Of a stretch of 64,000 bases of DNA, positions 1,235 through 37,350 are shown piece by piece; the first letter of the stretch is position 1; each line of letters starts with the position of its first letter. The stretch spans positions 25,048,001-25,112,000 of the forward strand of contig OZ365114.1 of the NCBI GenBank assembly GCA_977030845.1, given 5' to 3'. A model generated the notes under the pieces. That model worked only from the letters and a program-made list of their open reading frames with translations, had not been told where the DNA came from and did no database searches. Source of the stretch: Fimbriosthenelais zetlandica. Its lineage: Eukaryota. Position numbers and translations under genes: made by a program.

Positions 1235-4200
1235 ATGGCATCCTCCGATGGTGAGAATATTTTTTTTTATATTTGGGTTAATGCTTGGGGTAAAAAATCA
1301 TAAAGTTGTGTCATGTTGTTTATTATGATATCGTGAGATATATCTCCTCCAAGCTTGACCGGACATTGTATAAAAGGGCAGGAATGTAGGGGTGAACATG
1401 CAGCCCGTCCTCCAGACATCCCACCGTGACAGTCTACCGTGATGGTAGCCCTTCGTGCCGGGGAGAGAAGCAGCCGAGCTGTCAAACTTTCAAGGTCAAC
1501 TTTTGTACTATACTGGCCAGTGTATGGCTATTCAGATTGGCCATCTTCCTCTGTGTGGGTGTATAAATGAATTGTCATACTCTGACTTGGATTCTGCTTT
1601 GTTATCTGATAATTAACAGTACTGTATCATGTATGGTCAACGTGTCAGAGGACACGCCCCCCTAGCCATGTGTATTGTGTGTATCTGTTGACATTCCATC
1701 AATAGGCTGTAGGCCTACGTGTCCACTGATGAAGCACAGGGTCAGCTGTTTATGGTCAAAGAAAACATCTCCTTAAAGAGCTTACATTATTAATATTATC
1801 TCTCAAATAGATATAGTTATAACAGACTATACTAATTTTCATTGACATTTTTCACGTCATGTCACGATTAAAATTATATTGCATAGTAGGCCTAGGTAGG
1901 CTAACATAATGTGTAGACCTACATGTAATCATGTACATGTAGGCTAGACATAATGATCTGTTTTTACTGCTCAACATTTCAATAGATCTATCTTTTTTTA
2001 ATGCCATTCTCCCTCGGCTACCAGTCTAGCCTCCCAATATTGTCTCAGCTGGGGAGGTTTGGTTATGTCATGCAATGAATGCATTCAAACAAACATGATG
2101 TCTGGAAAATGAGATAAATTGAATGTGATATAGTTTATCTCTACATAATCCAGGCTACCCACTGCTGTGTCCTAAATTCATATGAACTGATCTAGCCTGG
2201 GAGGGGTGGGGTAACGTTACGTGGCCTAAATTCAGTCTATTAAATCTGTGATCCTACATTGTCTTAGGCTACAACTTGAAATAATCACTCACTGTCCATG
2301 CTTGAGTTTAAGAGTTTAAGAGTTTTTATTGCACACTTCGTCTCGGTCTTCCACCTGTACAAAAAATATTCAGTTAATTTAAAGTTTAAAGTGCAACAGA
2401 TTGTAAGTGGCGCTTGTTGCGAGTTGCTCGGAATGAGCAGGTGTATAAAGACGTACGTTATAGGAGAGGGGAATGTAATTAAGGCTAGTACGCCCTCTCC
2501 CAGCCTCTACAGGTACCTATATACCACTGAGTGGCTACCACTAGCTATGCCCTACATCTAACCTACTCTGGGAGTGGCCCACATATACGCCTCTTCTTCT
2601 CTACCTTGCAAGAAATTATCCCACCTCTGCCTTTTCACATGTATACAGCCAGCTGGCTACTTTGAATACCGCTCTTGATCAAACAGTTCTCAAAGGAGGC
2701 AGTTCACAGTTACCTGTGATCAAATCTTCCTGATCGAGGCTAGCGTTGAGTGATGGGTGAGTGATTTTAATTATGAGCCATTAAGGGTACCGTATTGTTC
2801 CAGTTTAAGAGCATGTAGGTTATCCACGTGGGGATATTGTCCATCTTGATATTCTTAATCTTAGCCTTAATCTTGTAATTTTAGCAATTTTAAGTTCAGT
2901 TTTAAGTTTAACTTACATTAACTGGATTGGTGAATATAATTTTTAAAATGCTCTTTTGGAAGAGAGTCAAAATGAGTCATTCTGCCCCACTTGTTGCAGT
3001 GGAGGGTACATCTATCATTGCAGGACATGTGGACTACATTTTACTTTCAGATTTTTATTGAGAACCTGTTCTGTTCCTAATCCGATCACCGGCAGTTAAA
3101 ATGGATCCTTTGCTTGTTATATTACCCCTCTATTGGAATATGTTTGTATTATAATTTATTAACCCAAAGGTTAATATTTTTTATTGTATACATACCGGTA
3201 CAACTCAGTTATATGGCATTCAGACATCAGTGGATCCATCATTTAAGAATGTGCCCCTGTTCTTTTTTTTCCACTGCTCTCCCCAAAGATCGGTAGGTGG
3301 CCCTACAAGGTGGAAGGTCATGGTCAACCACTGTATAATATACAAGTATTTTACATAGAAAAATATGTAAAGATCATGAATGGATTATAGAGGGGCAATG
3401 CATTTTACACGAACAATTTATTCATTTACATTCAAAACAAAGGTTCAATTGATAAAACTTAAAAGTATTACAATGTGACTTCATGAAATTTTAGAATTTC
3501 CCTGGGGATCATATATATTCCTCAAAATATGGCGGTGCATATAAGAAGTCAGAAATGTTATTTTCATTGCGACTAATAGGCATATGACACTAGGTTATGA
3601 GATTGATGACAGAGCAGGCAATTGACTGGTCTCCCTTCAATATAGCAACATTTTACTTAGCAATTGTAAAGTCTATTGCTAGAGGTAAAAGTGCAATCCA
3701 ATCTAATACAATGGTCACTATGTATTATACATGTAGTCTTTTGGTGGATGTTTTGGGAGGAAATGTGCAAGGGACGTTAAACCGCGTTAAACATGTGTGC
3801 ATGGGACGGAGGTGGCATGTGCTTGTGCTATAGGCGCATCTAAGACTTACTTGTGAAGCCTTTTCTCTTGCTAGGACTTTAGGGGTGAATCAAACTCTAT
3901 ACCTTCTCTCCTGCCTCCTTTCCATGTGTACATCGCCATGGAAACGCCAATAAACAATGCATTGGTCACCACCGAAGGCAAAACGAAGCCTGTTTGGTTG
4001 GAGGTGCATTCTTGGTGTCATCGTAGATGGTTTTTTTGACGGCTGATTTTTGCAGTTGTGTGTGTTTAGTGGAGTCTTGTATCAGGCAAACTGGTGGGAG
4101 GTAAGCCTGTCAGCCCACTACTTGGCCAACATTGGCCAACATTGGAGGAGCCTGCAGGAGCTGCAGATATACTGTTCAGGAACTTTTGGCACCTGGCATT

Positions 4201-7200: not shown

Positions 7201-10200
7201 TCATAATATTCCTATTGATAATGTCCGATTTCAAAGGTGGCAGTCGCACACAAGCATAATTCATCGAATTATCATTGTGAACTGATGAGATTCCCTTGCC
7301 TTGATGTCTATTTTTTATGACTTGTGTACTGCTTATTATTATTATGTATGCACTGTCGAAGGAAACAAGGGAAATGGGAAAGTCTTTGGAAAGTAAATAC
7401 AACTAGACCTGTGTATTAGCGGACAAAAATATCTGTACCAGTGTAGTGTCGTGAGATGTCAAACAAACGGACACTATTACCTTTTATTTACAGTAGTAAC
7501 TCCTGACTACATCTTGTGGGTCAGACATCTGCTCAGCCATAATATAAAAATATCTAATTGAGATTTTTTTAAGACTATCATTTCGGTGGTATATCAGATG
7601 GGCTGCATTTTCTTTTTATTTAAACAAATTTATCCTGGGTTTGTTCAGAGTCATTATCGTATTATCGTATGATTTGTGATATTGTTGTTGTGTGTTGGCC
7701 CTTCTGGACCAGTATAGGGGTGGGGACGATTAACTTACCCTCGTCACTGTTTCTGGCCACATGGCACGGGCCACAACTCTAAAAACTCTAAGCAAGAGGT
7801 ACTGGATCGGTGGAGGTGTGGAAGGCACTAGTGCAAGCATACCGAAGTAAACAGGCAGAAGACAATCCTCATCCTGCCTTCCACCGACCCTATAGGTTTA
7901 AAAACGCCCCTTTACATCCCCTCCTCCTCCTCCTCCTAGAGGCGCTGCTTGCTCCTGTTGCTGGAGGAGTATAGAATAGTCAGTTGGTTTTACCCACTCA
8001 GCCTGGAGGAAAGGTTGTGTTCTCGAGCACCTTGCCCTGGCTGGCTATATGCTACTATATAGACCATGCCTTCACCACTCTGACCTAGGCCTAAAATTAC
8101 TGCTGGGGAGGAATTTTATCAGTGATTAGGTGCTAATTTAAGTGCTTTTCTCAATAACTGGAGGTATTAGAGATATACGAGGCCCAGTGCCAAGTGCATG
8201 TGGATAATTGGATTTAATACTATTCTTCATATAATTTCTGGAGTTACTTAAGTGTCATCGTAACTGAAGGAGGATTAATCATCAGTGAATCTGCGTGGAA
8301 GGTGAAATGTGTGCAACGCCAATCAGTGACAGCTCGTGAAGAGATAAATCACTGATAGCAGTGGATACTGGATTACAGAAATCAATTAGAAACGCCAGAG
8401 GGAAAGTCTAAAGTTAATCTTGCTCAGTTGAGATATTTGTCTGCAGTGATGAAACAGTATCTCACGGCTTACATAACTGAGAACTAACGTGCTTTATCAT
8501 TGAAAAATTTGATAGAAATTTAGTTTAAAATATTAGTTTCAAAATTGAGTCTTCTACATACTTCCATCTCTTCTTGACATAATTCAAAATGTCGAGGAGA
8601 TTAGCTGAGTTGCAAGCCAAGTTTTCTGGCAATAAAGAATCCAGTCCATCTAAGCCAGCCCCTGGCCCTGGACAGCAGACTGGTCCATCCGCTGTCCAGC
8701 GCAAATGGGGTGCTAAAACAACATCTGGATCATCTGCTGAAGCTGCTTCTGCTGCACCATCCTCGGAGTCCCCTACAACAGCAAGTGCAGGTGCTGGGAA
8801 AGGCCAACCAGAACCTGCAGGTGCCTCCAAATCTACTGTAGACCCTCCAGCATGGAGGAGAGGTGCAGCCAAAGAGCCTGAAACCAAAAAGGCGCCAGAA
8901 GCAGCAGCAAAACCAGGTGCAAAAGATGATAAAAGTAGTACTCAAGAATCAGAAGCTCGCCAGGGATCTGGTGTTGGATTCCGTCGAGGACCACCTGAAC
9001 CAGAACCTAAACCTGATCCTAAACCTGCTCGAAAGTGGGGGAAAAAGCCTGAGCCTGAACCTGATTCTAAACCTGAGCCACCAAAGCCTGAACCTAAGCC
9101 TGCACGAAAATGGGGAAAAAAGCCTGAGCCTGAGCCTGAAGCAAAGCCTGAGCCGCCAAAGCCTGAGCCGCCAAAGCCTGAACCTAAGCCTGCACGAAAA
9201 TGGGGGCAGCCAGCACAGAAAACAGTGGCTGAACCTGAAAGCAAACCTGCTCCCAAGCCTGCAAAGAAATGGGGTGTAAAAGCCGCACCTGAACCTGAGC
9301 CCGAGCCTGAACCCAAACCTGAACCCAAACCTGAACCTAAACCTGAACCCAAGCCTGTTAAAAAATGGGGTGTTAAGAAACCTGAGCCTGAACCCAAACC
9401 CAAACCGGACCCTAAGCCTGTTAGAAAATGGGGGCGCAAACCCGAGCCTGAGCCTGCACCTGAGCCTGAGCCTGAATCCTTGCCTGAACCCAAGCCTGAG
9501 CCTAAGCCTGCAAAGAAATGGGGTGCTAAATCTGTTCCTGCTGTTGCTCCCAAACCTTCAAAGAAAACAGTTACAGTCACTCCCACGGCTGAAGATGTCC
9601 CCCTTCCAGTTGCACCTAAGCCTGCTGAGCCTTCAAAACCTTTGGTTCCTGCTAAGCCTATGCCTGAATTAGAAGAAAAAAAGATCATACCTATGCCACG
9701 GCATATACCCCCACCATTTTCAAAGGTTACTCTTGCTGGAACGGTTTCCCAAGAAACACCACGTGGCCCTGTCCCAGGAGCAAAGTCTTCATGGAAACCC
9801 TACACTGCTGGTCCACTACGAGCACCCGCTCCTCAGCAATTTGGACCACAGTTTGCAGTTCCACCGCAAGAAGTAAGTCAGGTTGAGATGGAAGTTAAAA
9901 CTGAAGATCAATTGTCTACTGATGACCAAACACAGGCTGCTAATGTTGCAGCCATTGAAAGCACGTTAGTTACTCAAGAACCAAAGCCTGCAGAGGAATC
10001 ACAAGTAATATCTGAACCAGTCAGTGAATTACCTAAGGAACCCTCCCAGGTAGAAGCTGAGCCTCCAGCTGCTGAAGGTGTAACAGAGGCTGCTGTGCCT
10101 GCAGAACCCACTCCTGCAGCTGCAGAACCAGTACCAGAACCAGCACTAGAGGCTGTCCCAGTGGCAGAAGCAGTGCCACAACCTTCAGAACCTGTACCTC

Positions 10201-13200
10201 AAGTTACATCTATAGAAGAAGCAGCGCCACAACCAGCAGAACCAACACCTGAGGCTCCACAACCGTCAGAACCAGTGCCTGAAGCTGCAACAGTAGAAGA
10301 ACCAGCGCCACAACCAGCAGAACCAACACCTGAGGCTGCACCAGTGGCAGAACCTGTAGCAGAACTGGCAGAACCAGTGCCTGAGGCTGCAACAGTGGCA
10401 GAACCAATGCCACAACCTTCAGAACCTGCACCTGAGGCTCCACCAGTAGCAGAACAACAACCACAGATTCCAGAGCAAGTGGCATCTCTGGACCAGACAC
10501 AGCCTGCTGTTGTTGAAGGTGGGCCAATTCAAAAAACTGAAGGTGAGGTTGCTACTATTCTTCCAGCTGAACTTGCCACAGAAGCTGCACCTCTGCCTAC
10601 AGAACCTCCACTAACTACTGAACCTCTACCTTTAGCTGAGCCTCCCCCTGCTTCACCAGCAGCATCTGCTCCAGAGCCTGCATCACTAACCGAGCAACCC
10701 CAAGTTTCAGAACCATGTAAAGCAGCAGAAATGATTGTGACCAGTCTTCCTGAGGCACCAGCAGGGGCAGAAACAGTTCCAGAGATTTCTCCCGTTCCTG
10801 TGTCTGAACCAGCAGCTGCTCAAGCTAGTGAGATAACTGCAGAACCAGTCCCAGCTTCTGTACCTGAACCTCAGGAGGCCAAGCTTCCAGAGGCAGAGCC
10901 TGTTCCTGTATCAGCTCCTGAGCCAGAACCGTCTCAAGTTCCTGAGCCATCACCAGAAGCAGTTCCAGATAGTGTTGTAACACCTGTTGAAATTGCAGTA
11001 CCAGAGCCTGTACCAACTCAGGCAGCTGAACTATCTGCTGAGCCAGTACCAGTAAGTGCAGTAGATAATGTAGCAGCTGTGTCTGAGCCGCCTGAAGTGG
11101 CAAAAGTACCTGAGGCTGAGCTTGGGGCTCAAGTTCCTGAAGCATCAGCAGGACCGGTTGCTGAATCTCCACCAGAAGTTACACCTGTGCCTGAACCATC
11201 AGTTTCAGAGCCTATACCAATAGTTACCACAGCAGTTGAAGTCTCTGAAGAATCAAGGGAGCCTCTTCCAGCAGCTCCTACTGCAGTTCCTGAAATTCCT
11301 GCACAAGAGCCAGGACCCAGTCAGGTAGTGATGGAACCGGCTCAAATACCACAACAAGAAGTAGCTCAAGTATCACAGCCTGAAGTGGCCCAAGTCCCTG
11401 AGCCTGCAACTGAGCCTCTTCCCATAGTTCCATCACAAATTCCTGCTACTGAACCTATATCTGAACCTGCCCCAGCTCAGGTTGCAGAAACTAAAATAGA
11501 AATTGCTCCAGTTATGCAACCTGCACCTGAACCTGTATTATCAGAGCCAGTTTCACCAGTGGTCGCCCCTGTTCCTGTATCAGAGCCTGCTCCAGTATCA
11601 GAGCCTGTTCAAGTGTCTGTGTCAGAGCCTGATGTTGCAAAGGCCCCTGAGCCACCAGCTGAGCCTGTTCAAACAGAACTTCCTGTATCAGCTCCTGAGC
11701 CTGTGGCACACGTCCCTGAGGCAGAACCAGGTCATGAGATTAAACAAGCTATTGCTCCACCTGAGCCTGTAGCCCCAGTGTCTGTACCTGAACCTGCCAC
11801 CAATCAAGCACCTGGAGATTCAGTAGGACCACCTGAGCCTGCACCAGTCGCAGCACAACTACCAGAGATACCATCAGCACTCCCACCACCAGATGTGGCT
11901 CCAGTATCTCTACCTGAGCCAGCAGCAGCCCAAGTTCCTCCAGAACCAGTTCCAGAGGCTATGTCAGTGATTTCAACAACTGTACCAGCACCTGCAGTGG
12001 CACAGTGTCCTCCAGGACCTGTAGCTCCAGTTCCAGAAGTCATGAGACAACCTGAACCGGCTCCATTTGTACCCACGGTGCCTGCACCATCTAAGCCAGA
12101 AGAGCCAGCTGCTCCGAAAAAAGCCTTTAATAAAATGGACATCAGAACACCAATGCCTGCACCACATACTGTGAGGATTGTACGTGTACCACGCACAAGG
12201 TTGGTACACCCATCACAGGTCAGGGTACTCCAGCCTAAAATAATACATCCATCAGGCCAAGCTGCTCCACCACAAGTGCCCAATCTGCCCCAGCAACCTG
12301 TTATGCAGCCTGAACTGCAGGTAGCAGCAGCACAGATGGCCGTAGGACCTCCTGTTCAGCAGCATGTACCCACACCTTTGGAGCAACATGTAGAAATGTT
12401 AGGACAACTACCCCAACCTCCTACTCAACAAGAGACCTCAATGAGACTCGAAACTGCTCCAGAAATACAGCAATTGCCATCTGAAAGTCAGCCACAAGTT
12501 TCTATGACTAATATAACATTTGAAAGTAAATCAGCTCCTGAACAATTTATAAAAGAACCTCCTGATGTAGCTCGAATTCCCCCAACAACGTTAGAAAATG
12601 CCCCAGGACCTGAACTTACACCACCAACGCCAGCTGATGCACCACAAGTTATTTCTACCAGCCAAATACAAATGAAGGCTGCCCCAGAGCAACAACTTCC
12701 TCCTCCCGTTGTACCTCCAGTGGTTGCTCAAGAAGTTTGTATTGTTCAAGGACCACCAATGTCTGCCCCTGCAGAACCAGAAGTTGTTCCTGTACAACAA
12801 ATACAAATGCAGGCTGCCCCTGAGCAGCAACTTCCTCCTCCCGTGGAAGTACCTCCAGTGGCTTCTCAAGAAGTTTGTATTGTTCAAGGGCCACCAATGT
12901 CTGATGTTGCAGAACCAGAAGTTGTTCCTGTACAACAAATACAAATGCAGGCTGCCCCTGAGCAGCAACTTCCTCCTCCCGTGGAAGTACCTCCAGTGGC
13001 TTCTCAAGAAGTTTGTATTGTTCAAGGACCACCAATGTCTGCCCCTGCAGAACCAGAAGTTGTTCCTGTACAACAAATACAAATGCAGGCTGCCCCTGTC
13101 CAGCAGCAACAAGTTTCTCTTCCACCAGAAGTGCCTCCAGTCGCTCCTCAAGAGATTGCCTTTGTTCAAGAACCAGCAATGTCTGCACCTGCTGAGCCAG

Positions 13201-16200
13201 TTCCTGAACCAGCCCAACAAATAGAAATGCAGGCGGCACAATTTCCTCCTCCCCTTGAAGTGCCCTCAGTTGCACCTGAAGAGGTTTCGTTTGTAGAAGC
13301 ACCAATGTTGGCACCAGCAGAGACAATCACTGAGCCAACTACTGTTGTAGAATCATTGCCAGAATCACATGTTTCAACAGTCTCTTTACCTGTTGAAACA
13401 TCAGAAAAGGTCATGCCACCAAGTGCAGTGGAGGAATTACCAGCAGCAGTTACTCCCCAGCAACTTACTGGACTAGGTCAAACGAGTAAAGGTGAAGGTC
13501 TAAGTCAGGGTCAAGACCAAGGTCAAGATAAAGTCCCAGACCAGGGCCAAGGTCAGCCACCATCAAAAGGTGAAGGTAAATTACCGCAAGAAGGAAAAGC
13601 ATTGGATGAAGCTGGTCGCTCAAAAGATGGGCCAACTGCTGTACATGATGGACAAAGTTAGTTCATTAATAGTTAATTATTCACTAGTTAATATTTAGTT
13701 AATCTTCTGTTCAGAGTTGATATGCATGGCAGACAGATGACATGTACTGACTCCTCAATTATTGTCATACATGTCGATCTGAGTAGTTAATCAAAGATTG
13801 ATTGCCATTTAAACTCTAAACTAATATATTTCTTATAGCTAAGATGGCTATAGCGATGAGTTTCACTCTCAAATTCAATACCAAGGGGGCATAATATGTC
13901 CATCCAAAATATGAGTTCGCCATACTGGTGTTCAATCTATTATTTAGTGAAGTATCTCCAGCAGGAGCAATGCCAGAAAGCAGCATATTACAAAGGGTTG
14001 GCACATCACAAATCAAGTTGTGCCGGTAGCACAAAGCATCAAATGTCACTTCCATAGACCTATGTATAGGCCTATTCTCTCTTCCAGTAAGACATGGCGT
14101 TTGCCACAACGGCTTACCGGCGTTGTGTGGGAGAAAGATTGTTTGAAATAACATGTTTTTTCTTTATAATTCTAGGTCCACAGAACCAGGCATTTGTGAC
14201 CCTTGCCACCAATGACACATATGCCCTCGGGGCATTGGTCTTGGGACATTCCTTGCGGAATGTGGGCACAACGCGACAACTTGCTGTTATGATCACCCAA
14301 GGCGTCACTCAAGGTGTCCGGTGAGTGCCTTTTTAATATACTATAAGAAGCCGGAAAGAGCTTCAGAAAATCGGTCAAACGAAATCATGTAATCTTAAGT
14401 ATATTTCAGTGTGAAAATGTGTTTTTTCTACTTCAGGTTCTTAGCCAAATATACATCTCTTTTTACTAGTATTTCCATATGTTTTTACTTCTCTGTAGTT
14501 TTAGTCCTTAGACCAATAGAAGTGGATGTCTGATGATTCACAAACATTACCCGGTTCAAGACTCAGTGTTGACTGGTGCTTGAAGAAATATAAATATCTG
14601 ACATTTCTCTTCTTTGACTGTTGGGCCAGCCTCTACTTTCCTACCCCACGCCCCTCTTTATCTGGTAAAGGTGGGCCCCAAACTTAGCCAGCTAACAGAT
14701 AGAATGTGTGCTCAGAGCAAAACACCCATCACCTACTGACATGTGAAATCCAGTGTAAATCCGACAACAGAAGTGTACAATTCCAAAGGGAATTTTGTCA
14801 ACTGAGATATATTTATTTCGTATTGGCTTTCTGATATCAATGTTAAAATATTGGTCAGGTGTAAATTGGTGTTCACGGGCAAAACCCTCTTCTCCCAGGA
14901 GAAACTTTCAGTTGGATGAATTACTTATTAATCTGAAAAAAAAACGTGCACCTTTCAAAAAAATTACCCCTCCCAATAGCGAAGGATCTCGAAAAAATTG
15001 TTAATATAAACCTTTCATGATACGTTTTTTTCAAAATATATTTTGTAAACTATGCCTAATGTTTATTGAAAAAATATTTATCTGTTCTCTGTGCCCCTCA
15101 CTTTGTCTATCTACAATACTCTGCCTCTCCCACAAAATCATCATCCACCGTGCATGTGTTACACACTATACCTCCAACATATAAAAATAGGAAAAGTCAT
15201 GTAAAAATTACCTCCGCAGCTCTAGGTGAGCAAGTCACCCTAGTAACCTAAGCGAGTTACTCAGCTCCCGCCCACACTGTGATAGCGTGTGTTGCATGGT
15301 TGGGGCCGTTAGATTGCGCTACATGAGAACTGCCAGGTTACCTCATTCAAGGTGATTCTCTATGCTATCTAGTGTCACTCTCACAAGGTCAGTTAAGACC
15401 TTGAGCTACTAAGTATAGGTACTAATATATTTACAGGGCACTGGCCTAAATGCTCGGCTGATGGGTAAAATGATGAATAGTTATTCCACTGACCTGTTTA
15501 TGAGTAAAACTCTTTATCCTGTATTCTTATTGGAATCTTGTGAATTACTATTCTAACCCATATCAATTAAATTGAAAGGAATTAAAGGCGGTTAAATATA
15601 CGCAGCAAAAAGTTTCTTGGGGATAATTGGAACAATATCTCATGTGGGCTGGCTTTGAAATCATTTCTTATTATAGGTGATCAGCTCCTAGTATACCGCT
15701 CACCTGGCATCCCTCCAAGTCACCCCGGTTGCCATGGGAACCTAGAGTTGCACCTTTCTATCAGATGTTTTCTTTTCTCCCCATGAAATTAGTTTTTTGG
15801 TTCTTCTTACTTTCTCAAACTCTTAGTCTTGCTGCAGGTGAATACTAAGATTCATTGTGAAGCCATTTTAAAGACTTCATTGCAGCAGCTCTGAGTTTTG
15901 AGTGTAATAACAATTCTTCAATTTTTGATAGATCGTGAGTTTGGCACATACACCTGTTGAGTCAGTCTAACTCTAAGTGAATGGGCTAAGGTCTGAGGTA
16001 ACCAGGCCATGGGGCAACTAAGCCCACAGCATGCATTATTGGTGTATTACTTATATTAACGTACAGAGGGCAAACTCTGGTATAAACTGGTCCAGCACCC
16101 AATAGAAATTATGAGAGTCCATGTTGTGGAATGATAAAATGTTCTTATTATTAATGATAGGCTAATTAATGAGATATCCCCAAAATAGGCTGCGATATCT

Positions 16201-19200
16201 GCTGTTAAATCAAAGAAACTTTGACCTATTGGATCAATCAAATTGAAGACTTTTTAGAGGAAATCTTTACTGATAACAGCTTTTTCTTTGTATTGCAGAC
16301 ATCAGTTGACACAGTTGTTTGACAGTGTGACGGTGGTAGATGTTATGGACAGTGGAGATGCTGCCAACCTCGCTCTCTTAGCTCGACCTGACCTTGGGGT
16401 GACCTTCACCAAACTACACTGCTGGAGACTGACACAGTACACCAAGTGTGTCTTCATGGACGCTGACACCCTGGTACATTGTCTTTAACCCAGTCAAAAT
16501 TCACCTTGTCAGTGTTCAAATGCCATAGGGAGGGGTCCAGAACCAACTAAGACCTGACTATGAAGTTCTAAATGTCCTCAAGAACATTGAGTATTGCCAA
16601 AGATGGATATTGCAAAGCACTATAAACTTCACTGCCTCAGAACCAATGTTAGCAGCACAACTATCATATCTATCCTTCTTGCTCTCCTGATAGATACTCT
16701 AACCATGATTGATTGTCATGTTTCAGGTTGTACAGAACATTGATGAGTTGTTTGATCGGGAGGAGCTATCAGCCGCGCCTGACGCTGGCTGGCCTGACTG
16801 CTTCAACAGTGGCGTCTTTGTCTTCAGACCATCAGAGGAGACTTACCAATCTTTACTACAGTTTGCTCTTACACATGGAAGCTTCGACGGTAGGTATCAA
16901 TGTAACCCATGTAAGCTTCAATGGTAACTTATGTTAGCTTCAATGGTCATTGTCTTTTCAGTCACTGTATCAGATTCATTGCTAACTGTCTAATGTTGCA
17001 GGTGGCGATCAAGGACTCCTCAATTCATACTTTAAGGACTGGGCCACTAAAGACATAGCAAAACACCTGTCTTTCGTCTACAATGTAGTATCTCAAGCCT
17101 TCTATAGTTATTTACCTGCCTTTAAACAGTAAGTTTTATCATTTTGAAGTAAAAAACAACTTTTGAATGGCTTATTTTTCCATATTCCATGGTTACTTCA
17201 AAGAGACAACCATGTCTTCTGCTTGGCTAAAAAAAATGTGAGGTACCAAGCATAACTTGGCGCTTTGAGTTCCCGGGTCTTCTTTATGGAGGGGGTACAT
17301 TTTGTAAATGGTATTTTTCTCTGCAAATTTTGACACCTGCAGATGCAGCAAGACAAGGTAAAAGACCAAGAAAATAAAGTTCTAATTGTTACCTGATGCC
17401 TTGTCAGATTCCAGGATAACGTGAGAGTGGTGCATTTCATTGGAACAGCCAAACCATGGCATCAAAAGTACAATACAGGTACAGGCCAGGTGGAGCAGTC
17501 TGGTGGCGTGGCGCACAACCAACACTTCCTCCAGCTGTGGTGGAAACTCTTCATGGACAAGGTGAAGCCGGGACTGGAGCCAGGCGTGGTGAGTAGGCCC
17601 TTAACTCTCTACCTGTAACCAACCAAAAACAAAAAAGGAAAAAATGAGAAATCAGATAATCCTTATTTGAAATATATTCAGATGATAAAATATGCGTGAT
17701 AGCGACTGCTCAACTCGTAAGGAATCTTCATTTCAAACTTTAATAAACCTCAATAGTATTTCTGGTAAGATTATTGCAGTCTCTTGCAGTCAAGTTTTGA
17801 CTAAATTAAGTAATTATGGCATGAAGTTAAAATGTTTATGACAACTCTAGATTTGTGATTACTAAACTAGTAAAAGAGTGTGACCAAGTTGCTTATAACC
17901 AAACTGATTCCATATAGTTGTAATGTTAAATTCCCTTTCTCTTTTGTTGATTAGATCTATAAGCATGAGATTGCCCCACGTTATTCCCCCAAACAAAATC
18001 CATTTCCATTTCGGCATCATTGTTCTATTAGAAACAAAAGTGTTAAACTAATTCGATGCATGAAGCTCAGTTGAGAAAAGGTGCATGTGAGCCTGCCGAA
18101 AAAAAACTAACACTGACATTGGGTGGGCAGGTGGACAAACTAGTAAGACATGCAAGGTATTTGTTCTACATACACTGTCCTTAAAGTATGAGGCAGATAT
18201 ATACATCAACTGAACATGACTTATTCCATGAGAGAGGTAGAGTTTCTATATACTACATGGTCATTGTAATATCATACCTGTAAGTTGATGAGTCCAACAG
18301 ATGCTGTACTTCATATGAACATCAGGCTTGGATCCACTTTTGGAGATTGTTATCAACAGGCGATTGGATAATTTCTGCTTGATTACATTTAAACTAGAAA
18401 TTTTGAAGCCAAATAGCATCCAAATTGCCTTTTATAAATCGCCAAAGTGGAGCTTTGCCTTATGAGACTGATTGTGTATACATGCGAGTGAACATCGGCG
18501 TTTCATATCATAAACCCATTCTATCTCGCCCATCAATAGGTTTGGAATACATGTGAAGACAACTGCTTGATTTTCTCTTTTACCAATCGCGTTTCATTTG
18601 CTACATCAGGCTATGCTACATCATTTCTCCTTGTGAAAAAAATTGTTGCAAAATGCTTTGGAGTTAGGTTAATTATATTTGTATGATATAGAAACCAATT
18701 ATTCTTATTCCCTGCATGCTAACAGCTCAAACAAACTGGACAGGTAAAGTCAAAAACATTACATTATATAACCACGATTTATCATTAATTGTATTGTTTA
18801 TCTGAATTACAACTTTTATTTGGCTATAAAATTAATATAAGAAACACTCATTTCTCATTAGTTAAGACATATTACACACAAAAGTCGCAGTATCTAATTC
18901 TTTATGCATGATGTATTTTAGACTTGGTTAAGAGGTTTTCTTCAGAACATTGTACACATGATCAACTGATTCAAAATCAGTATAACTGCTAAAGCAACGG
19001 AACTCTGAATCAGGTGTCAATAGCTTTATACTGAAAAGTCGATACTTTATATATTCCTTTTCATCAACCTGTTTCTTTCTCTTTCCATTCCTGGTTTCTT
19101 TTCAAAAAGTTTAAGTTATGCTCTCCTTCGTTAAAGCACAACTGTATTAAAACTATAAAGTAGCTGTCATTTAGTTCTATAACTACCCCACCTGAAATTT

Positions 19201-22200
19201 AGATAGGGATGAGTAGAACATTCCTTTAGATATTTACCCCCAACTTCTCCAATATACAAAAATATCCTTTGTCAGTACATTCTATTTCAACCTTAGTAGC
19301 ATGCATCCCACCTTCCTTTTCGTTCCTTTCTATGTTTTATTACCCAACGAATAAGTCCTGTTGTAAATTGGAGATTATTTTTCTTCCAACACGAAAAAGG
19401 GTAATATGGTCCTTCAACTGTATACATTGCTACCATAGAGGACATGGGCTTTAACTGAGGAGATCTTCTATTTTCTCATTTCTAAAGCTACTTATGAAGA
19501 TTACCCTATCCTCTCTGAAGGCAGATGCCAAACCTCAAAACCTCGGTCCCCTATCTGAATGTCCTGATAAGTTTCACTCTGTGGTAAGAAGTCTTTGACG
19601 GTTTTCACTATCCTACCCTGATCTGCATGAATGTATGTTGCCTTTAAATGTTTCCAAATGGCTATGCTTCAGATCCTCAAAAATGAGCTATACCTAAAAT
19701 GATAATGTCTGAAAGGCCGCTTTTTTGGTATTTCGTGAAGAAAAGAAAAAAGTTGGAATAAGTTTAAATTCTTATTATAATCCTAAAATGCATCTCTTTT
19801 TGCATTGCGTAAGCATAATTGTCCAGTTTTAAACCATGTCCCTCAAAGTGCTGTACTATTGGTTCTTATTTTTGTCTTTGTTTTCTGTCTTTTGTCAATG
19901 TCTGTTCCAGTCCCTCAGATGCCATTCGTCATGTTCTTACTCAAGGGTTTTAAGCCATTGCTTTGTCCCTCAAACCCTTTCTTCTTCTTTTCTATTATCT
20001 GTCTTCTCTGTCCACCACTTCTCCCTCTTCTTCTTTGTCTCTTTATTCTCCTACTCTTCATTTGTGAGTCTTTGTTAGCCTCATCATTGCCTTCATCATT
20101 GTGTTACCGGTATCAAATCGTTTGGGCTGAGATCATAAGGATCCGCTTGTCAAGCTTGCTCCCAATTTACTAGCTTTCTTCACATTTCTTTTGAAAGCAT
20201 TCAGCTGAGGATACAATAACAGATCAGGATGTTGTCAGGAGTCCAGATGAAGCAAGTATCACTTTGGGCTTATTGAGATGCGCCATTATAAAGTATGTTC
20301 CTTGTTTCTAAAGGAAGATCAGCAGTTAACCATTGGGACACATGACCAGTCTATTTCATTCAGAAATAACATGATCAAATTCCATGCCCTTGACCAGAAC
20401 ACCTGTGTTATAATAATAATTAACTAATTTATGCATAAGAAGATCCTATTGTGAACCCAGTTAAACATACTTTCTTTCGCGCAAGGAACATATCTGTATG
20501 GTGGGTCTTATTCATAACTTAGTAACCAAGGAGGAGCTGCATTTCACTGAAATGGTTGAGGGTTCTTTTATTTTATTAGTTCTGTACACACGTATTGCCT
20601 TGCTTTACCATTTCGCTTTCATCCTGTCTCAATGTACACTTCGGCTAGAGGCTCTTTGTTTAATTTAACCCCAAGTAAATGTGCACCGGCTCTTTGTTTA
20701 GTAGCGCATTTTATATCTCTATCATTAAGTCCTTTCCAAGGTAGGCTATACATTGTATCGGTGAGTTCGGAAATGTGTTGTGGACATTTTATCATCTCAT
20801 GGTAACATTATTTACATGTGTAAATTATTACTGCATGGTCATGAACCATGTTCTCAACGAGGTCATGTGACCTTAAACCTTGTTGACCTTATCCTGAAGA
20901 CTCACTGTTGGCTAATGGACACCCAATTATGGCTCCAGAAATTGTCAAAAGGAATTGTCAGAAGCACAGGAGATGGAAGTCAAGTAGGGCATTATAAGGC
21001 AGAGCTGTGGGCGACTGCTTCCTAAATGACTCAACTTCAGTCATATAACAATGGCAGCATTATTAATTAATACCCAATCACAATAGTTTGAAAGTGGTGT
21101 GAAAGAGTTCTTGTTCTAATCTACTTCCATTATATGGACGAGTTCCCCAGTCAGGTTACCCACACCAACTAAAGGTTTCCCCGCTCTGTGGGGAATAGAA
21201 AACAAATGAAACCTAAGAAAAATTGCTTGCACGCACACACACCCATCCATCACCTCACTATGTACAATGCTAAATGAGCTTCTTGCATCAAATGAGCTGT
21301 GATTTCTATGGCTTAGCGTAACTTCCTTTCTATTTCAGTCTATCAATGTAAATCTCTATAATTGACAAGAGATAAGATAAACTATTTTTTCCACCTTTCC
21401 TTTAAATCTATTTTCTTGTCCCTTTTGAGCTTTTGACCTTGTACCCAAGCCAGGTACTCAAGTTGTGTGGCCATCTAACCCTTTCCTTTACAGACTTATC
21501 TTTTTCAATGCCACTTGCTGTCTTCTGTCCCAGCCCTTGGCTGTCATGGTGATGGCCACAAACTGTTTCTACTTGTAGGTGGGCATGCTTTCACTGTTTC
21601 ATGACTCATCCCAAAAATTAGGCACCCACGGATCAACGCAAGATATTAACTATCCCCTGTCGCCTAACACCAGCTACCCTGAGAAGTGCATGAGCTCACC
21701 CTATGTTCCTCCAGCAATGACTGTCTATTATGACCCACCTCCTGTTGCTAACCAGCCACCTGTCTCCGTAGTCATGCCAGAAAGGCCATATACATTCTTC
21801 GAGAGTTTTTATTCTGAGCCACCCATGACCAACTCCGAGAGTTACACTTCCCCTTACCACGTCTACAATGCTAATGAGTTCTGTCATGCATGGAATCATC
21901 ATCATAACCAAGCAGGGGAACAGGCGGAGGATGGGGTAGAGGGTCCATGTTCTATGGACACATGTGAAGGTCATCATTGTGGTGGTCAAGGTGGAGGGTG
22001 TGGTCCTGCCAATGAAGAGGAACAGGATGAGCTGGCCCACTGTTCTGGAGCATCTTGTCACGGACAGGGGCATTGCGACAGTAACCAAATGCATGATCCA
22101 AAGAAAAATGTAGATAACCAACCCATGCAAAATGCAGACACAAGTAATAACAATGTGAGAGTTGAAGCACCAGGAGCGCAGGACAGCAACAAGAACAAGG

Positions 22201-24105
22201 TAGATATTAGTGGGCGTGTGAGTAATAAGTGGTCAGATTCAACACATGTAAAGAAGGACTCATTCTATAAGTGTGAGGTGAGATAGACAACTTCATTGTA
22301 TGAATGAAGGATGAAAATGACCTAGTATCTCAGGGTGATAGTGGTGTTTGCCTCTGGCATCATAATAATATGCTGACATTCAGAGGTTAAACATATGATG
22401 ACATTCTGTTCCATCTCCTGCCTGTAGCTTTCCACTGGCCTTTTAAAGACGATGAGTAACATTTGGGTAAGGTTCTTTAAAATATCCTCTGAGAGAATTA
22501 AACCCCTCTGAAATCATTACACTCTGGTCGGTGGACGCAGGGCAAAATGACGCTCCACAGGTCTTTAGGGATGCAAGATTCAGATAATGTTAATTATCTG
22601 AATTACAATTTACAAACTGCCTTTTACTCATCTCTGACGTAGGGTTTTTGGCAATTGAACTTGCATCTCTATGTCATATACCCGGATGTAAAAGAATGTG
22701 CATGAAAGAATCATGGGGATCACCGGAGAAGCGTTCACTAAACTTAAAGCAAATGCTTTGACATTTGAGGCCCCCCTCTCTTGATCGTTATTATAGTCAC
22801 TGTACACGTTGGATCTTTTATGATTTAGTAGAAGCCTGATAGTCCTATGAGCTAATATCATTTGGGATGACAATTTAATGTCCTTGGTATGTGATAGTGT
22901 CAATTGTCTGTGTAGTATAAAGGTTCATAAGTTCGTAGCTAGATACATATGTATAATATTATCATCTCAATCAATGGAATTCTTAATTGCTTTCTTGTAA
23001 ATAGAGGGCTACTGTGGCTTATATTATTTCTTCCAGTACTGGTATGGTACTTACCAATCGGGTATGCTAAATGTTGTATGCTCATTACACAACGTTAATT
23101 CTTATCTTTGGGGTTGGGTTCTAACATGTTTCAACTAATCAAGCATGCTAGTCTGATATGCTTCCATCATGAAGTATATCAAGATACATTTTCTATCTGG
23201 CAGCGTTTCTAAATTATATCCACTACTGATCTTCTGGAAATGGCACCTGTAACATCACCACTTTATTAATATGCATTTAAATAGGGAATGTTGGATTACA
23301 ATGCCGTACACAGTAAGTAACAGTTGCCTAATCCATTGTTCTAACTTTGTTTTACCCAGCCTTCATGTTGGACCTGCACAGTAAGGGTGGTCCTACTTTA
23401 TCATGTTATTTGAAATTAACTTGATCTTTTATTTAGAACTGTGGCATTTCACTATTGATCATTAATAACGGTATAAATACCATCACCACAACAAGCAGTA
23501 ACTTTGGAAATGTTGTGTGGATTTCGTAAATAACTGTTTCTAAAACTTACAAAAGTAGTTTGCTGATATTCACATGTTGTTTAGCATGTTCAAATGCTCC
23601 TTTAATTATTTTAGCATGTGTCTAACATGTTTCCTTTCTTTTGCTTGTCTTTTTACTTCAGGGTTAGTACTGTCATTTCCCTTCTGAATGGTTGTTATTA
23701 TTTCGTTTATTTGTATAGATGGGTGTAGTTGGTGCTATGGCTACTCTAAAAGTGGAATCCGGCGCAGATTACTCCAGAGTAAGTCATTCTTTATCTTACC
23801 TTAAAATGAAGATTTAAATTTCTGTTCTTAAAGGAATGTAGGTCATTTTCACAACCTAATATAAGTGGCCATTCAATGGATGTACAATGGTAAAGGTTGT
23901 ACTTACTTATTGATTTGTGCTCTTTTCATCTTATTCGTGTCATGTTTTCTTGAACTGATTAACATTTCCTATTTCAAAGGCGGAACTTGATGATCAGCAG
24001 CGGCAGTACCACTGGGAGAAAGGTCAGATTGATTACATGGGCGTAGACGCATTTGCCAACATTCAGGCTCGCCTGGACACGGTGATTAAAGGCGACAAGA
24101 AATAG
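1235..24105 (+). CDS. GYG1: Glycogenin (GT8 self-glucosylating glycogen primer), short isoform, 8 coding exons, 330 aa
   Basis: Exons 1235-1250 (MASSD, G|GTGAGA), 14176-14320, 16299-16473, 16727-16889, 17002-17128, 17408-17588, 23719-23778, 23980-24105. All introns are GT-AG with matching phases; total 993 nt. Translation shows family hallmarks: [52 protein letters not shown] (DxD), [40 protein letters not shown] (acceptor Tyr region), [11 protein letters not shown], and the C-terminal [23 protein letters not shown] (glycogen-synthase-binding tail). Confidence 0.97.
8589..13656 (+). CDS. Giant alternative first coding exon of glycogenin (1,689 codons + 1 nt), Pro/Glu/Ala/Val-rich and PEVK-like; if unspliced it is a stand-alone 1,690-aa ORF ending at 13661
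   Basis: Stop-free 5,073-nt ORF. ATG in caaaATG context with an in-frame TAA at 8580-8582. Repeats are synonymously diversified, so this is not a simple DNA microsatellite. It ends CAA A|GTTAGT, a phase-1 donor matching the phase-1 acceptor of glycogenin exon 2 (tctag|GT CCA CAG AAC CAG GCA). Coding status is well supported; the fusion is inferred. Confidence 0.8.
8995..9530 (+). repeat. Coding repeat block: (K/E)P dipeptide tracts punctuated by [KR]KWG
   Basis: Translation [14 protein letters not shown]..., [37 protein letters not shown]. At DNA level, CCTGAA/CCTGAG/CCCAAA hexamer variants. Confidence 0.9.
12663..13073 (+). repeat. Three tandem 135/138/138-bp coding repeats (45-46 aa), followed by two degenerate copies to ~13320
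   Basis: Units start with caaatacaaatg at 12663, 12798 and 12936, and a fourth begins at 13074. Peptide: [46 protein letters not shown]. Confidence 0.95.
21579..22277 (+). CDS. Candidate in-frame cassette exon of glycogenin (233 aa; Pro/Ser/Tyr-rich, then Cys/His/Gly-rich, then Asn/Asp-rich)
   Basis: The ORF begins exactly after a pyrimidine-rich acceptor (tttctacttgtag|GTG, phase 0) and has a phase-0 donor GAG|GTGAGA at 22277/22278, three codons before its stop. The flanking glycogenin exon ends at 17588 and 23719 are both phase 0. It could instead be an alternative terminal exon (TAG at 22284-22286). Confidence 0.7.
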
Positions 24106-36900: not shown

Positions 36901-37087
36901 ATGTGATATTTCAGTTGCAATTTGTTGTTTTTAGCAACATTAAGATATCACATCTATATGAATGATATCTAGTGAGGTGTAATAAAGCTTAAATACCAAT
37001 TGTGGTAGTAATTGTTCATGAATTAGTACTTTGAATTGTCTAAATTCTATGTCGCTGTGAGTTTTCTTACCTGGTGGTAAATACCGG

Positions 37088-37093
37088 TTTATT
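37088..37093 (-). terminator. Candidate polyadenylation signal of the polycystin gene
   Basis: AATAAA on the - strand about 260 nt downstream of the stop at 37351. Confidence 0.35.
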
Positions 37094-37350
37094 ACTACAC
37101 ATTTTAATGAACGTTGCATTGATTTTCATGTCCGAGGAAACATTTATGTACCTAAAAGGTCAATTGTTGTTATTTACTGGTGACTTTACATCTAGAATTG
37201 CTCAAGTTTGCATTTCCATATAATAAAGATCATAGATGCTTTAATGGTGTACACCTCTTATTTCAACTATATATAATTGGTGGGAAATTGAAATTTCCGG
37301 ATCATTGCGATCAAGAACGGAATGCAACTTCTGACAACAGCTAAAATCCC

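What the first reader, a model, noticed from the sequence alone, without database searches (positions are those of the whole stretch)
8589..14320. Giant ~2,000-aa 'tethered' glycogenin: a 5-kb PEVK-like exon in intron 1 splices in frame onto the catalytic domain
Seen in sequence: (a) a stop-free 1,690-codon ORF sits in glycogenin intron 1 on the same strand; (b) its last codons CAA A|GT TAG T overlap a GTTAGT donor at phase 1, the same phase as the short first exon (GAT G|GTGAGA, 1250) and the exon-2 acceptor (14176), so joining gives ...[14 protein letters not shown] with no frameshift; (c) GTTAGT is used as a donor elsewhere in this window (polycystin exons ending 51869 and 41704); (d) there is no AATAAA/ATTAAA between the ORF stop (13661) and exon 2, which argues against a stand-alone nested gene. 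Predicted product: 6,045 nt, 2,014 aa (2,247 aa with the cassette exon), versus 330 aa for the short form. Established: glycogenins are normally ~330-500-aa GT8 primers that stay attached to the glycogen particle, and Pro/Glu/Val/Lys-rich tracts form the extensible disordered spring of titin-like proteins. Inference: this isoform could tether glycogen granules at a distance from a cytoskeletal or myofilament anchor. I do not know of a described glycogenin with this architecture, but could not search.
Basis: partly seen in the sequence, partly recalled or inferred. Interest (0 to 1): 0.92.

Follow-up and report, generated by a model that had tools for sequence, protein, structure and literature searches.

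The report
Giant disordered exon upstream of glycogenin
A real 1,690-codon gene segment for a floppy, proline-rich protein lies inside the first intron of the glycogen-primer gene glycogenin and could be spliced in frame onto the enzyme, giving a roughly 2,000-residue form, but no RNA data could be obtained to show that this join happens.

Summary
The + strand ORF at 8589-13661 has 1,690 codons and is clearly coding: it has no internal stop, against 53 and 149 in the other + frames. Its codon periodicity runs through every block up to the last 30 codons, then vanishes on both sides. It lies in intron 1 of a canonical glycogenin gene, 519 nt upstream of exon 2. Joining 13656 to 14176 keeps the frame and gives 1,994 aa, or 2,014 aa with a 60-nt linker exon.

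The key step, the splice, could not be tested. No sequencing run was listed, and no homologue was found. That second negative carries no weight, because a control PKD1-like exon from the same window also found nothing.

Every NGT codon gives a phase-1 GT, and AAA|GTTAGT ranks only 20th of 289 GT sites. However, GTTAGT is a verified donor in the neighbouring gene. There is also no AATAAA or ATTAAA from 12129 to 15566, and the ORF ends very close to exon 2.

I put an alternative first exon fused to glycogenin at about 0.55 and a separate nested gene at about 0.3. "PEVK-like" holds only for composition, and the tether function is speculation. The scan had not found this on other DNA.

The parts
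1235..1250 (+). Putative short first coding exon of glycogenin (MASSD + 1 nt), donor GTGAGA. It lies at the edge of a CpG-rich region.
   Evidence: sequence. CpG o/e is 0.9-1.0 at 1-1000; it is in frame with exon 2. It is too short to confirm by homology.
8589..13656 (+). Giant coding exon: 1,689 codons plus 1 nt. It encodes a disordered protein rich in Pro, Ala, Glu and Val. It is a candidate alternative first coding exon.
   Evidence: frame-specific openness and periodicity; all repeat spacings are multiples of 3; no folded domain is predicted, mean pLDDT 46 and 40.
8700..9530 (+). Basic tip of the exon: eight [KR][KR]WG motifs, plus AWRRG and GFRRG variants just upstream, spaced by Pro-Glu/Pro-Lys linkers.
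   Evidence: motif list at residues 38-312; net charge is positive over residues 1-400..
12687..13250 (+). Four tandem 46-aa Q/P/V-rich units. Three of them are 89-91% identical at the DNA level.
13657..13662 (+). Candidate phase-1 donor GTTAGT. It contains the ORF's TAG stop (13659-13661).
   Evidence: 0.68 bits, rank 20 of 289 GT sites; the same hexamer is a verified donor at 41704 on the minus strand.
13657..14175 (+). Candidate 519-nt intron, or the 3' flank of a nested gene. It has no canonical poly(A) signal.
   Evidence: no coding periodicity, and 10-12 stops in each frame.
14176..14320 (+). Glycogenin exon 2. It starts at residue 3 of the catalytic domain, with a phase-1 acceptor.
   Evidence: it aligns to residues 3-44 of glycogenin-1 and glycogenin-2 chains, E 2e-9.
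16299..17588 (+). Glycogenin exons 3-6 (16299-16473, 16727-16889, 17002-17128, 17408-17588). They contain the DxD motif (MDADT) and the acceptor-tyrosine segment (AFYSYLPAF).
   Evidence: chained CDS. E 2.6e-22 to glycogenin-1. PF01501.
21579..22277 (+). Optional 233-codon cassette exon in the linker.
   Evidence: open frame; tag|GT acceptor and GAG|GTGAGA donor; no Pfam match. Its inclusion was not tested.
23719..23778 (+). Candidate 60-nt linker exon, phase 0 to 0.
23980..24105 (+). Last glycogenin exon, carrying the glycogen-synthase-binding C-terminal motif and the stop codon.
   Evidence: it aligns to residues 301-332 of glycogenin-1 and to the GYG-1 peptide of 4qlb.

Best explanation
The 5.07-kb ORF is an alternative first coding exon of the glycogenin gene. 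It would be transcribed from its own promoter, which is not a CpG island, just upstream of 8589. Its weak GTTAGT donor at 13657 would be spliced to the constitutive exon-2 acceptor at 14176.

The product would be a glycogenin of about 2,000 residues. The complete GT8 catalytic domain, linker and glycogen-synthase-binding tail would be preceded by about 1,690 disordered residues. These comprise:
- a basic tip of about 400 residues with eight [KR][KR]WG motifs;
- an acidic Pro/Glu/Val/Ala spacer of about 750 residues with almost no Lys or Arg;
- a short basic patch;
- Gln/Pro-rich 46-residue repeats.

Shown: the ORF is coding, the join is in frame, the downstream gene is a complete canonical glycogenin, and GTTAGT donors are used in this genome.

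Inferred: glycogenin stays covalently bound at the core of the glycogen particle. A random coil of 1,690 residues has an expected Rg of about 16 nm and an end-to-end distance of about 40 nm (polymer scaling, my own knowledge). That would be long enough to emerge from a particle of about 20 nm radius. The tail could therefore present its basic tip to a partner (a tether), or act as an acidic entropic brush that limits packing or particle size.
For: The ORF is coding.

The chain is in frame, giving 1,994 or 2,014 aa with one stop.

Exon 2 begins at residue 3 of the catalytic domain. N-terminal additions are tolerated: PDB chains carry tags of about 20 residues, and glycogenin-2 has a natural extension of about 33 residues (residues 36-76 align to 3-43).

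The canonical architecture is present downstream: and PMC9188544.

Coding periodicity runs to the last codon, so the exon or ORF boundary is at 13656-13661 and not at the stronger upstream GT sites.

A GTTAGT donor with a non-G at -1 is verified at 41704.

There is no AATAAA or ATTAAA from 12129 to 15566, against a median spacing of 387 nt in the window.

The ORF ends 519 nt before exon 2 in a 12.9-kb intron. That is about 7% likely for a randomly placed nested gene, and it leaves little room for a 3' UTR.

The upstream in-frame stop and the good ATG context fit a first coding exon.

Nothing else in intron 1 looks coding, and no Rfam family matches.
Against: There is no RNA evidence of any kind: none was listed.

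AAA|GTTAGT scores 0.68 bits on a generic donor matrix. Most glycogenin donors score 2.6-7.3, although exon 3's GTACAT scores -0.6.

Phase compatibility is nearly automatic in a Gly-rich tail that uses GGT codons.

A stop embedded in the donor is equally what a stand-alone ORF ending NGT-TAG would look like.

There is no CpG-rich promoter signature at 8000-8600.

No orthologue shows the fused architecture, though these databases also miss the window's PKD1-like exon.

No paper describing such a glycogenin was found.
Confidence: 0.55

Rival explanations
1. The ORF is a separate, single-exon gene nested on the same strand in glycogenin intron 1. It would have its own promoter, use the TAG at 13659, and be polyadenylated at a non-canonical signal before exon 2. 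The result would be a free 1,690-residue disordered protein unrelated to glycogenin function.
For: It is a complete ATG-to-stop ORF with an in-frame stop just upstream. The donor is weak. Variant hexamers AATATA (13823), TTTAAA (13808) and AAAATA (13906) lie downstream of the stop. The sequence turns AT-rich, with stops in all frames, directly after the TAG. First-reader notes elsewhere in this genome describe several other giant single-exon disordered ORFs (unchecked).
Against: There is no AATAAA or ATTAAA for 1.9 kb downstream. Only 519 nt are available for a 3' UTR and termination before a strong acceptor. Read-through would place the stop upstream of exon junctions, which would be expected to trigger nonsense-mediated decay (established knowledge). 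Same-strand nested genes are the rarer kind.
Confidence: 0.3
2. The exon is transcribed and spliced, but not. One possibility is use of an internal phase-1 donor, such as 10543 AAG|GTGAGG or 13576 AAG|GTAAAT, which would give shorter fusions. Another is inclusion behind short exon 1 as a non-productive cassette. A third is a donor after the stop (14087 GTAAGA), which would give an unstable transcript.
For:: 10543 scores 7.7 bits, the best in the region, and 13576, 13570, 13552 and 13492 score 3.4-3.7; all are phase 1. A possible acceptor, tgtctgcag, lies at about 8446 upstream of the ATG.
Against: Coding periodicity and the open frame persist to 13656, beyond all these sites. This argues that the full exon is under protein-level constraint. 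Joining exon 1 at about 8446 runs into a stop after 13 further codons (reading).
Confidence: 0.12
3. The open frame is a chance product of A/C-rich, T-poor repeats and is not a gene.
For: The sequence is low in complexity and repetitive. The other strand also carries ORFs of 150-250 aa. No homologue was found.
Against: P(no stop) is about 7e-33 from composition. The other frames carry 38-149 stops. The non-repetitive stretches (residues 330-480, 1160-1350 and 1600-1690) are open too. There is strong three-base periodicity with sharp edges at the ATG and at the stop. Codon preferences match neighbouring genes.
Confidence: 0.02

Closest known systems
Canonical animal glycogenin (GYG1/GYG2; GT8 self-glucosylating primer)
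   Same: The downstream exons encode the full architecture: the GT-A catalytic domain with its DxD motif and acceptor-tyrosine segment, a variable linker, and the C-terminal region of about 34 residues that binds glycogen synthase (architecture as described in PMC9188544). From memory, intron 1 is phase 1 a few codons after the ATG in human GYG1 as well.
   Different: Known length variation lies in the linker and, for GYG2, in an N-terminal addition of about 33 residues. A disordered N-terminal extension of about 1,690 residues was not found in any paper searched.
Titin PEVK region and similar entropic-spring segments
   Same: It is rich in Pro, Glu and Val, with Lys in the first 400 residues. 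It is predicted to be unstructured and is encoded by repeats whose spacing keeps the frame.
   Different: No Pfam family, titin PPAK included, reached its threshold at E <= 0.1; the sole listed match was a sub-threshold Trypan_PARP hit. Ala (13%) and Gln (8%) are major components. Residues 400-1100 have almost no Lys or Arg and a net charge of about -105. It is one exon rather than many small PEVK exons. The resemblance is compositional only.
Glycogen-anchoring proteins (STBD1/genethonin-1; PPP1R3A/GM)
   Same: The concept is the same: positioning glycogen particles by a protein with a long linker and an anchoring end. This comparison rests on my own knowledge and was not tested here.
   Different: Those proteins bind glycogen non-covalently through carbohydrate-binding modules and anchor by a transmembrane helix. 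Here the anchor would be the covalent primer itself, and no membrane or carbohydrate-binding module is present.
Same-strand nested genes in introns
   Same: It is a complete ATG-to-stop ORF in a single exon inside a host intron.
   Different: It lacks a canonical poly(A) signal and ends 519 nt from the host's next exon, at a site usable as a phase-matched donor.

Membership tests
Glycogenin (GT8 family) | Sequence homology of the catalytic domain to glycogenin-1 and glycogenin-2 | tested here: met
   Exon 4 matches glycogenin-1 at E 2.6e-22 over residues 108-161. Exon 2 matches at E 2e-9 over residues 3-44. PF01501 is found on exon 6.
Glycogenin (GT8 family) | DxD metal/UDP-glucose motif and the self-glucosylated tyrosine segment | tested here: met
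   The chained CDS contains FMDADTL and AFYSYLPAF at the positions of the human motifs. Assignment of the acceptor Tyr is by alignment from memory.
Glycogenin (GT8 family) | C-terminal glycogen-synthase-binding region (GN34) | tested here: met
   The last exon aligns to residues 301-332 of glycogenin-1 and to the GYG-1 peptide in 4qlb. The region is defined in PMC9188544.
   5,985 nt, a multiple of 3, with a single terminal stop; the junction reads ...HDGQ-S-PQNQAF.
   Both run searches listed nothing. No exact product is on record.
   AAA|GTTAGT scores 0.68 bits and ranks 20 of 289. The same hexamer with a non-G at -1 is a verified donor at 41704.
   No homologue was found. The databases also miss a control PKD1-like exon from the window, so these negatives are uninformative.
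Titin-type PEVK segment | PPAK-type repeats of about 28 residues, or poly-E modules recognisable by profile | tested here: not met
   Pfam at E <= 0.1 gives only a weak Trypan_PARP low-complexity hit. P+E+V+K is 51%.
Stand-alone nested gene | A poly(A) signal and 3' end between the stop and the host's next exon | tested here: not met
   No AATAAA or ATTAAA lies in 13661-14176, or anywhere before 15566. Only variant hexamers are present. Use of a variant signal cannot be excluded.

The most novel reading that the evidence does not exclude
An animal makes a glycogenin of about 2,000 residues from an alternative promoter. The covalent primer at the core of the glycogen particle would then carry a disordered N-terminal tail of about 1,690 residues. 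The tail would be long enough to reach out of the particle and present a basic [KR][KR]WG-repeat tip, physically tethering or spacing glycogen granules through their own primer.
Probability: 0.45. Interest if true: 0.7.

Novelty: new variant of a known kind. Interest (0 to 1): 0.5.

Why it matters
Glycogenin is usually seen as a small primer buried in the glycogen particle. Positioning of granules is attributed to non-covalent partners such as PP1 targeting subunits and STBD1. A primer with a built-in disordered arm of about 40 nm would be a different way to place granules, space them or limit their size. It would also be easy to test by RT-PCR, western blot, or deleting the exon. If the ORF is instead a nested gene, it is simply one more large lineage-restricted disordered protein of unknown role.

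Tried and rejected
RNA evidence: two run searches, window 13000-14330 as RNA and 8589-14330 as any kind, listed nothing, so read laying could not be used.

Homology searches:
- A word-based search of the whole ORF gave only IF-2 low-complexity hits.
- The same search restricted to residues 1170-1690 gave nothing.
- An exhaustive HMMER search of residues 1-1200 against 1.84 billion representatives gave 9 low-complexity hits, the best at E 6e-7.
- The ESM Atlas returned generic disordered proteins with scores of 0.66 or less.
- A metagenome scan with the ORF tail gave nothing.
- An exact-product look-up found nothing on record.
- The control, the window's 1,388-aa PKD1-like exon, also found nothing. 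I therefore do not read these negatives as lineage restriction.

Pfam on the ORF gave nothing meaningful. Single-sequence AlphaFold of residues 1-480 and 1160-1690 predicted no domain, only a helix at residues 2-12 and short strands in the 46-aa repeats.

Seven literature searches found no extended glycogenin.

I rejected the chance-ORF reading.

I rejected joining short exon 1 into the giant exon: the only plausible acceptor, at about 8446, leads to a stop, and the phase-1 AGs inside the first codons lack pyrimidine tracts (reading).

I rejected the upstream phase-1 GT sites as the constitutive donor, because coding periodicity continues past them.

The organism was not identified. First-reader notes elsewhere guess an annelid (unchecked).


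Full report
**Observation**

The window holds a + strand ORF from 8589 to 13661, 1,690 codons long. An in-frame TAA sits two codons upstream of its ATG, and the start context is ttcaaaATGt.

The ORF is not a composition artefact. Its frame has no internal stop, while the two other + frames have 53 and 149 and the minus frames have 38-67. From base composition, about 72 stops would be expected, giving P of about 7e-33 for none. All repeat spacings are multiples of three. Synonymous codon choice resembles that of the glycogenin and PKD1-like exons in the window, with A/T-ending codons preferred and NCG avoided. Codon-position bias is present in each of 13 blocks and in the last 30 codons, and disappears immediately before the ATG and after the stop.

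The sequence is therefore protein-coding from 8589 to the stop. The coding boundary lies at 13656-13661 and not at any upstream GT.

**Setting**

The ORF lies in intron 1 of a complete, canonical glycogenin gene on the same strand. I chained these exons:
- 1235-1250 (putative)
- 14176-14320
- 16299-16473
- 16727-16889
- 17002-17128
- 17408-17588
- 23980-24105

Exon 4 matches glycogenin-1 at E 2.6e-22. Exon 2 aligns from residue 3 of the catalytic domain. The last exon carries the glycogen-synthase-binding tail. This is the architecture described in PMC9188544.

Nothing else in intron 1 looks coding, and no Rfam family matches. CpG observed/expected is 0.9-1.0 at 1-1000, next to the short first exon. 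It is only 0.3-0.45 at 8000-8600, so any promoter for the giant exon is not of the CpG-island type.

**The proposed join**

The ORF ends GGA CAA A|GT TAG T. Exon 2 starts GT CCA CAG after ttctag. Joining 13656 to 14176 gives ...HDGQ-S-PQNQAF and a CDS of 5,985 nt with a single terminal stop. That is 1,994 aa, or 2,014 aa with the 60-nt exon.

**How strong is the case for splicing?**

The weaker points:
- Every NGT codon yields a phase-1 GT. The ORF has 49 such codons, 8 of them in its last 52 codons, because the tail is Gly-rich and uses GGT. A phase-1 GT near the end is therefore expected by chance.
- Most of the glycogenin donors score 2.6-7.3, although exon 3's GTACAT scores -0.6, which shows that weak donors are used in this gene.
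- A stop inside the donor is what either hypothesis predicts for this hexamer.

The supporting points:
- I verified that GTTAGT with a non-G at -1 is a functional donor in this genome. The two minus-strand exons flanking 41704 align to consecutive residues of the human polycystin-1 PLAT region with no gap when joined there.
- There is no AATAAA or ATTAAA on the + strand from 12129 to 15566, which is 3.4 kb. The median spacing in the window is 387 nt, and glycogenin's own stop is followed by AATAAA at 24666.
- The ORF ends only 519 nt before exon 2 in a 12.9-kb intron. This is improbable for a randomly placed nested gene and leaves little room for a 3' UTR and termination.
- A transcript reading through into exon 2 without using an upstream donor would leave its stop ahead of exon junctions. 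That would be expected to trigger nonsense-mediated decay (established knowledge).

Taken together I favour the alternative-first-exon reading at about 0.55. A stand-alone nested gene using a variant poly(A) signal (AATATA at 13823 or TTTAAA at 13808) stands at about 0.3. Other splicing outcomes stand at about 0.12.

**What could not be done**

No sequencing run was listed for either query, so the junction could not be tested.

No homologue of the ORF was found by any of these:
- word-based search
- exhaustive HMMER search of residues 1-1200
- the ESM Atlas
- a metagenome scan
- exact-product look-up

A control search with the window's 1,388-aa PKD1-like exon also returned nothing. These negatives therefore say nothing about conservation in related animals. 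The organism was not identified.

**The protein**

Composition is P 22%, A 13%, E 12.5%, V 11%, Q 8% and K 5%. Aromatic residues and Cys are nearly absent. Pfam finds nothing beyond a low-complexity hit. Single-sequence AlphaFold predicts no domain, only a helix at residues 2-12 and short strands in the 46-residue repeats.

The layout is modular:
- Residues 1-400 are net basic, with eight [KR][KR]WG motifs plus two aromatic-RRG variants.
- Residues 400-1100 are strongly acidic, with almost no Lys or Arg.
- A basic patch lies near residues 1178-1215.
- Four Q/P/V-rich units of 46 residues follow, three of them 89-91% identical at the DNA level.
- The tail is Gly/Gln/Asp-rich.

"PEVK-like" is thus a compositional likeness only.

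**Mechanism (inferred)**

If fused, the extension attaches at residue 3 of the catalytic domain. PDB chains carry tags of about 20 residues at this position, and glycogenin-2 carries a natural extension of about 33 residues, so catalysis should be compatible with it.

Glycogenin remains covalently bound at the particle core. A 1,690-residue coil has an expected Rg of about 16 nm and an end-to-end distance of about 40 nm (polymer scaling, my own knowledge). That exceeds the roughly 20 nm radius of a beta-particle. The basic tip could therefore reach outside the particle and bind a partner, while the acidic middle acts as a spacer or brush. None of this is tested.

**Novelty and verdict**

No paper in the library describes a glycogenin with a long N-terminal extension. 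If real, this is a new variant of a known enzyme family.

Noticed in passing
window 14026-14176: An ATG at 14094 (agacATGg) is in frame with glycogenin exon 2, with no stop over 28 codons. It lies beside a CpG-rich patch; CpG o/e is 0.65 at 14001-14500. This could be a third 5' end for glycogenin, or chance.
   Followed up: no
window 10543 (also 10519, 13492, 13552, 13570, 13576): The strongest donor-like site in the giant ORF is AAG|GTGAGG at 10543, at 7.7 bits and phase 1. If used with exon 2, it would give an in-frame fusion with an extension of about 651 residues. Several moderate phase-1 sites lie in the last 60 codons.
   Followed up: partly
window 12129-15566: A 3.4-kb stretch of the + strand has no AATAAA or ATTAAA, although the window median spacing is 387 nt. 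It spans the ORF end, exon 2 and the start of intron 2.
   Followed up: partly
window 8700-9530: Eight [KR][KR]WG motifs, plus AWRRG and GFRRG just upstream, are spaced 20-35 residues apart in Pro-Glu/Pro-Lys linkers. Regularly spaced Trp-Gly motifs in a disordered chain look like a multivalent docking array. The partner is unknown.
   Followed up: partly
window 12687-13250: There are four tandem 138-nt (46-aa) units. Three are 89-91% identical, which suggests recent in-frame tandem duplication. Each unit has a short predicted strand (EVCIVQG).
   Followed up: partly
window about 37000-51900, minus strand: A PKD1/REJ-like gene has a 4.2-kb exon (50528-46365, 1,388 open codons), a PLAT domain and polycystin-1-like membrane segments. 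Its donor at 41704 is CAC|GTTAGT, verified by gapless continuity with human polycystin-1.
   Followed up: partly
window 10001-12000: CpG observed/expected falls to 0.08-0.10 inside the ORF, far below the surrounding intron (0.3-0.6). C at the third codon position is only 7%. This is consistent with long-term CpG decay under protein-level constraint.
   Followed up: no
window 13669-13705: The octamer TAGTTAAT occurs three times within 40 nt directly after the ORF stop. Its meaning is unknown.
   Followed up: no
It is not confirmed by homology.
   Followed up: partly
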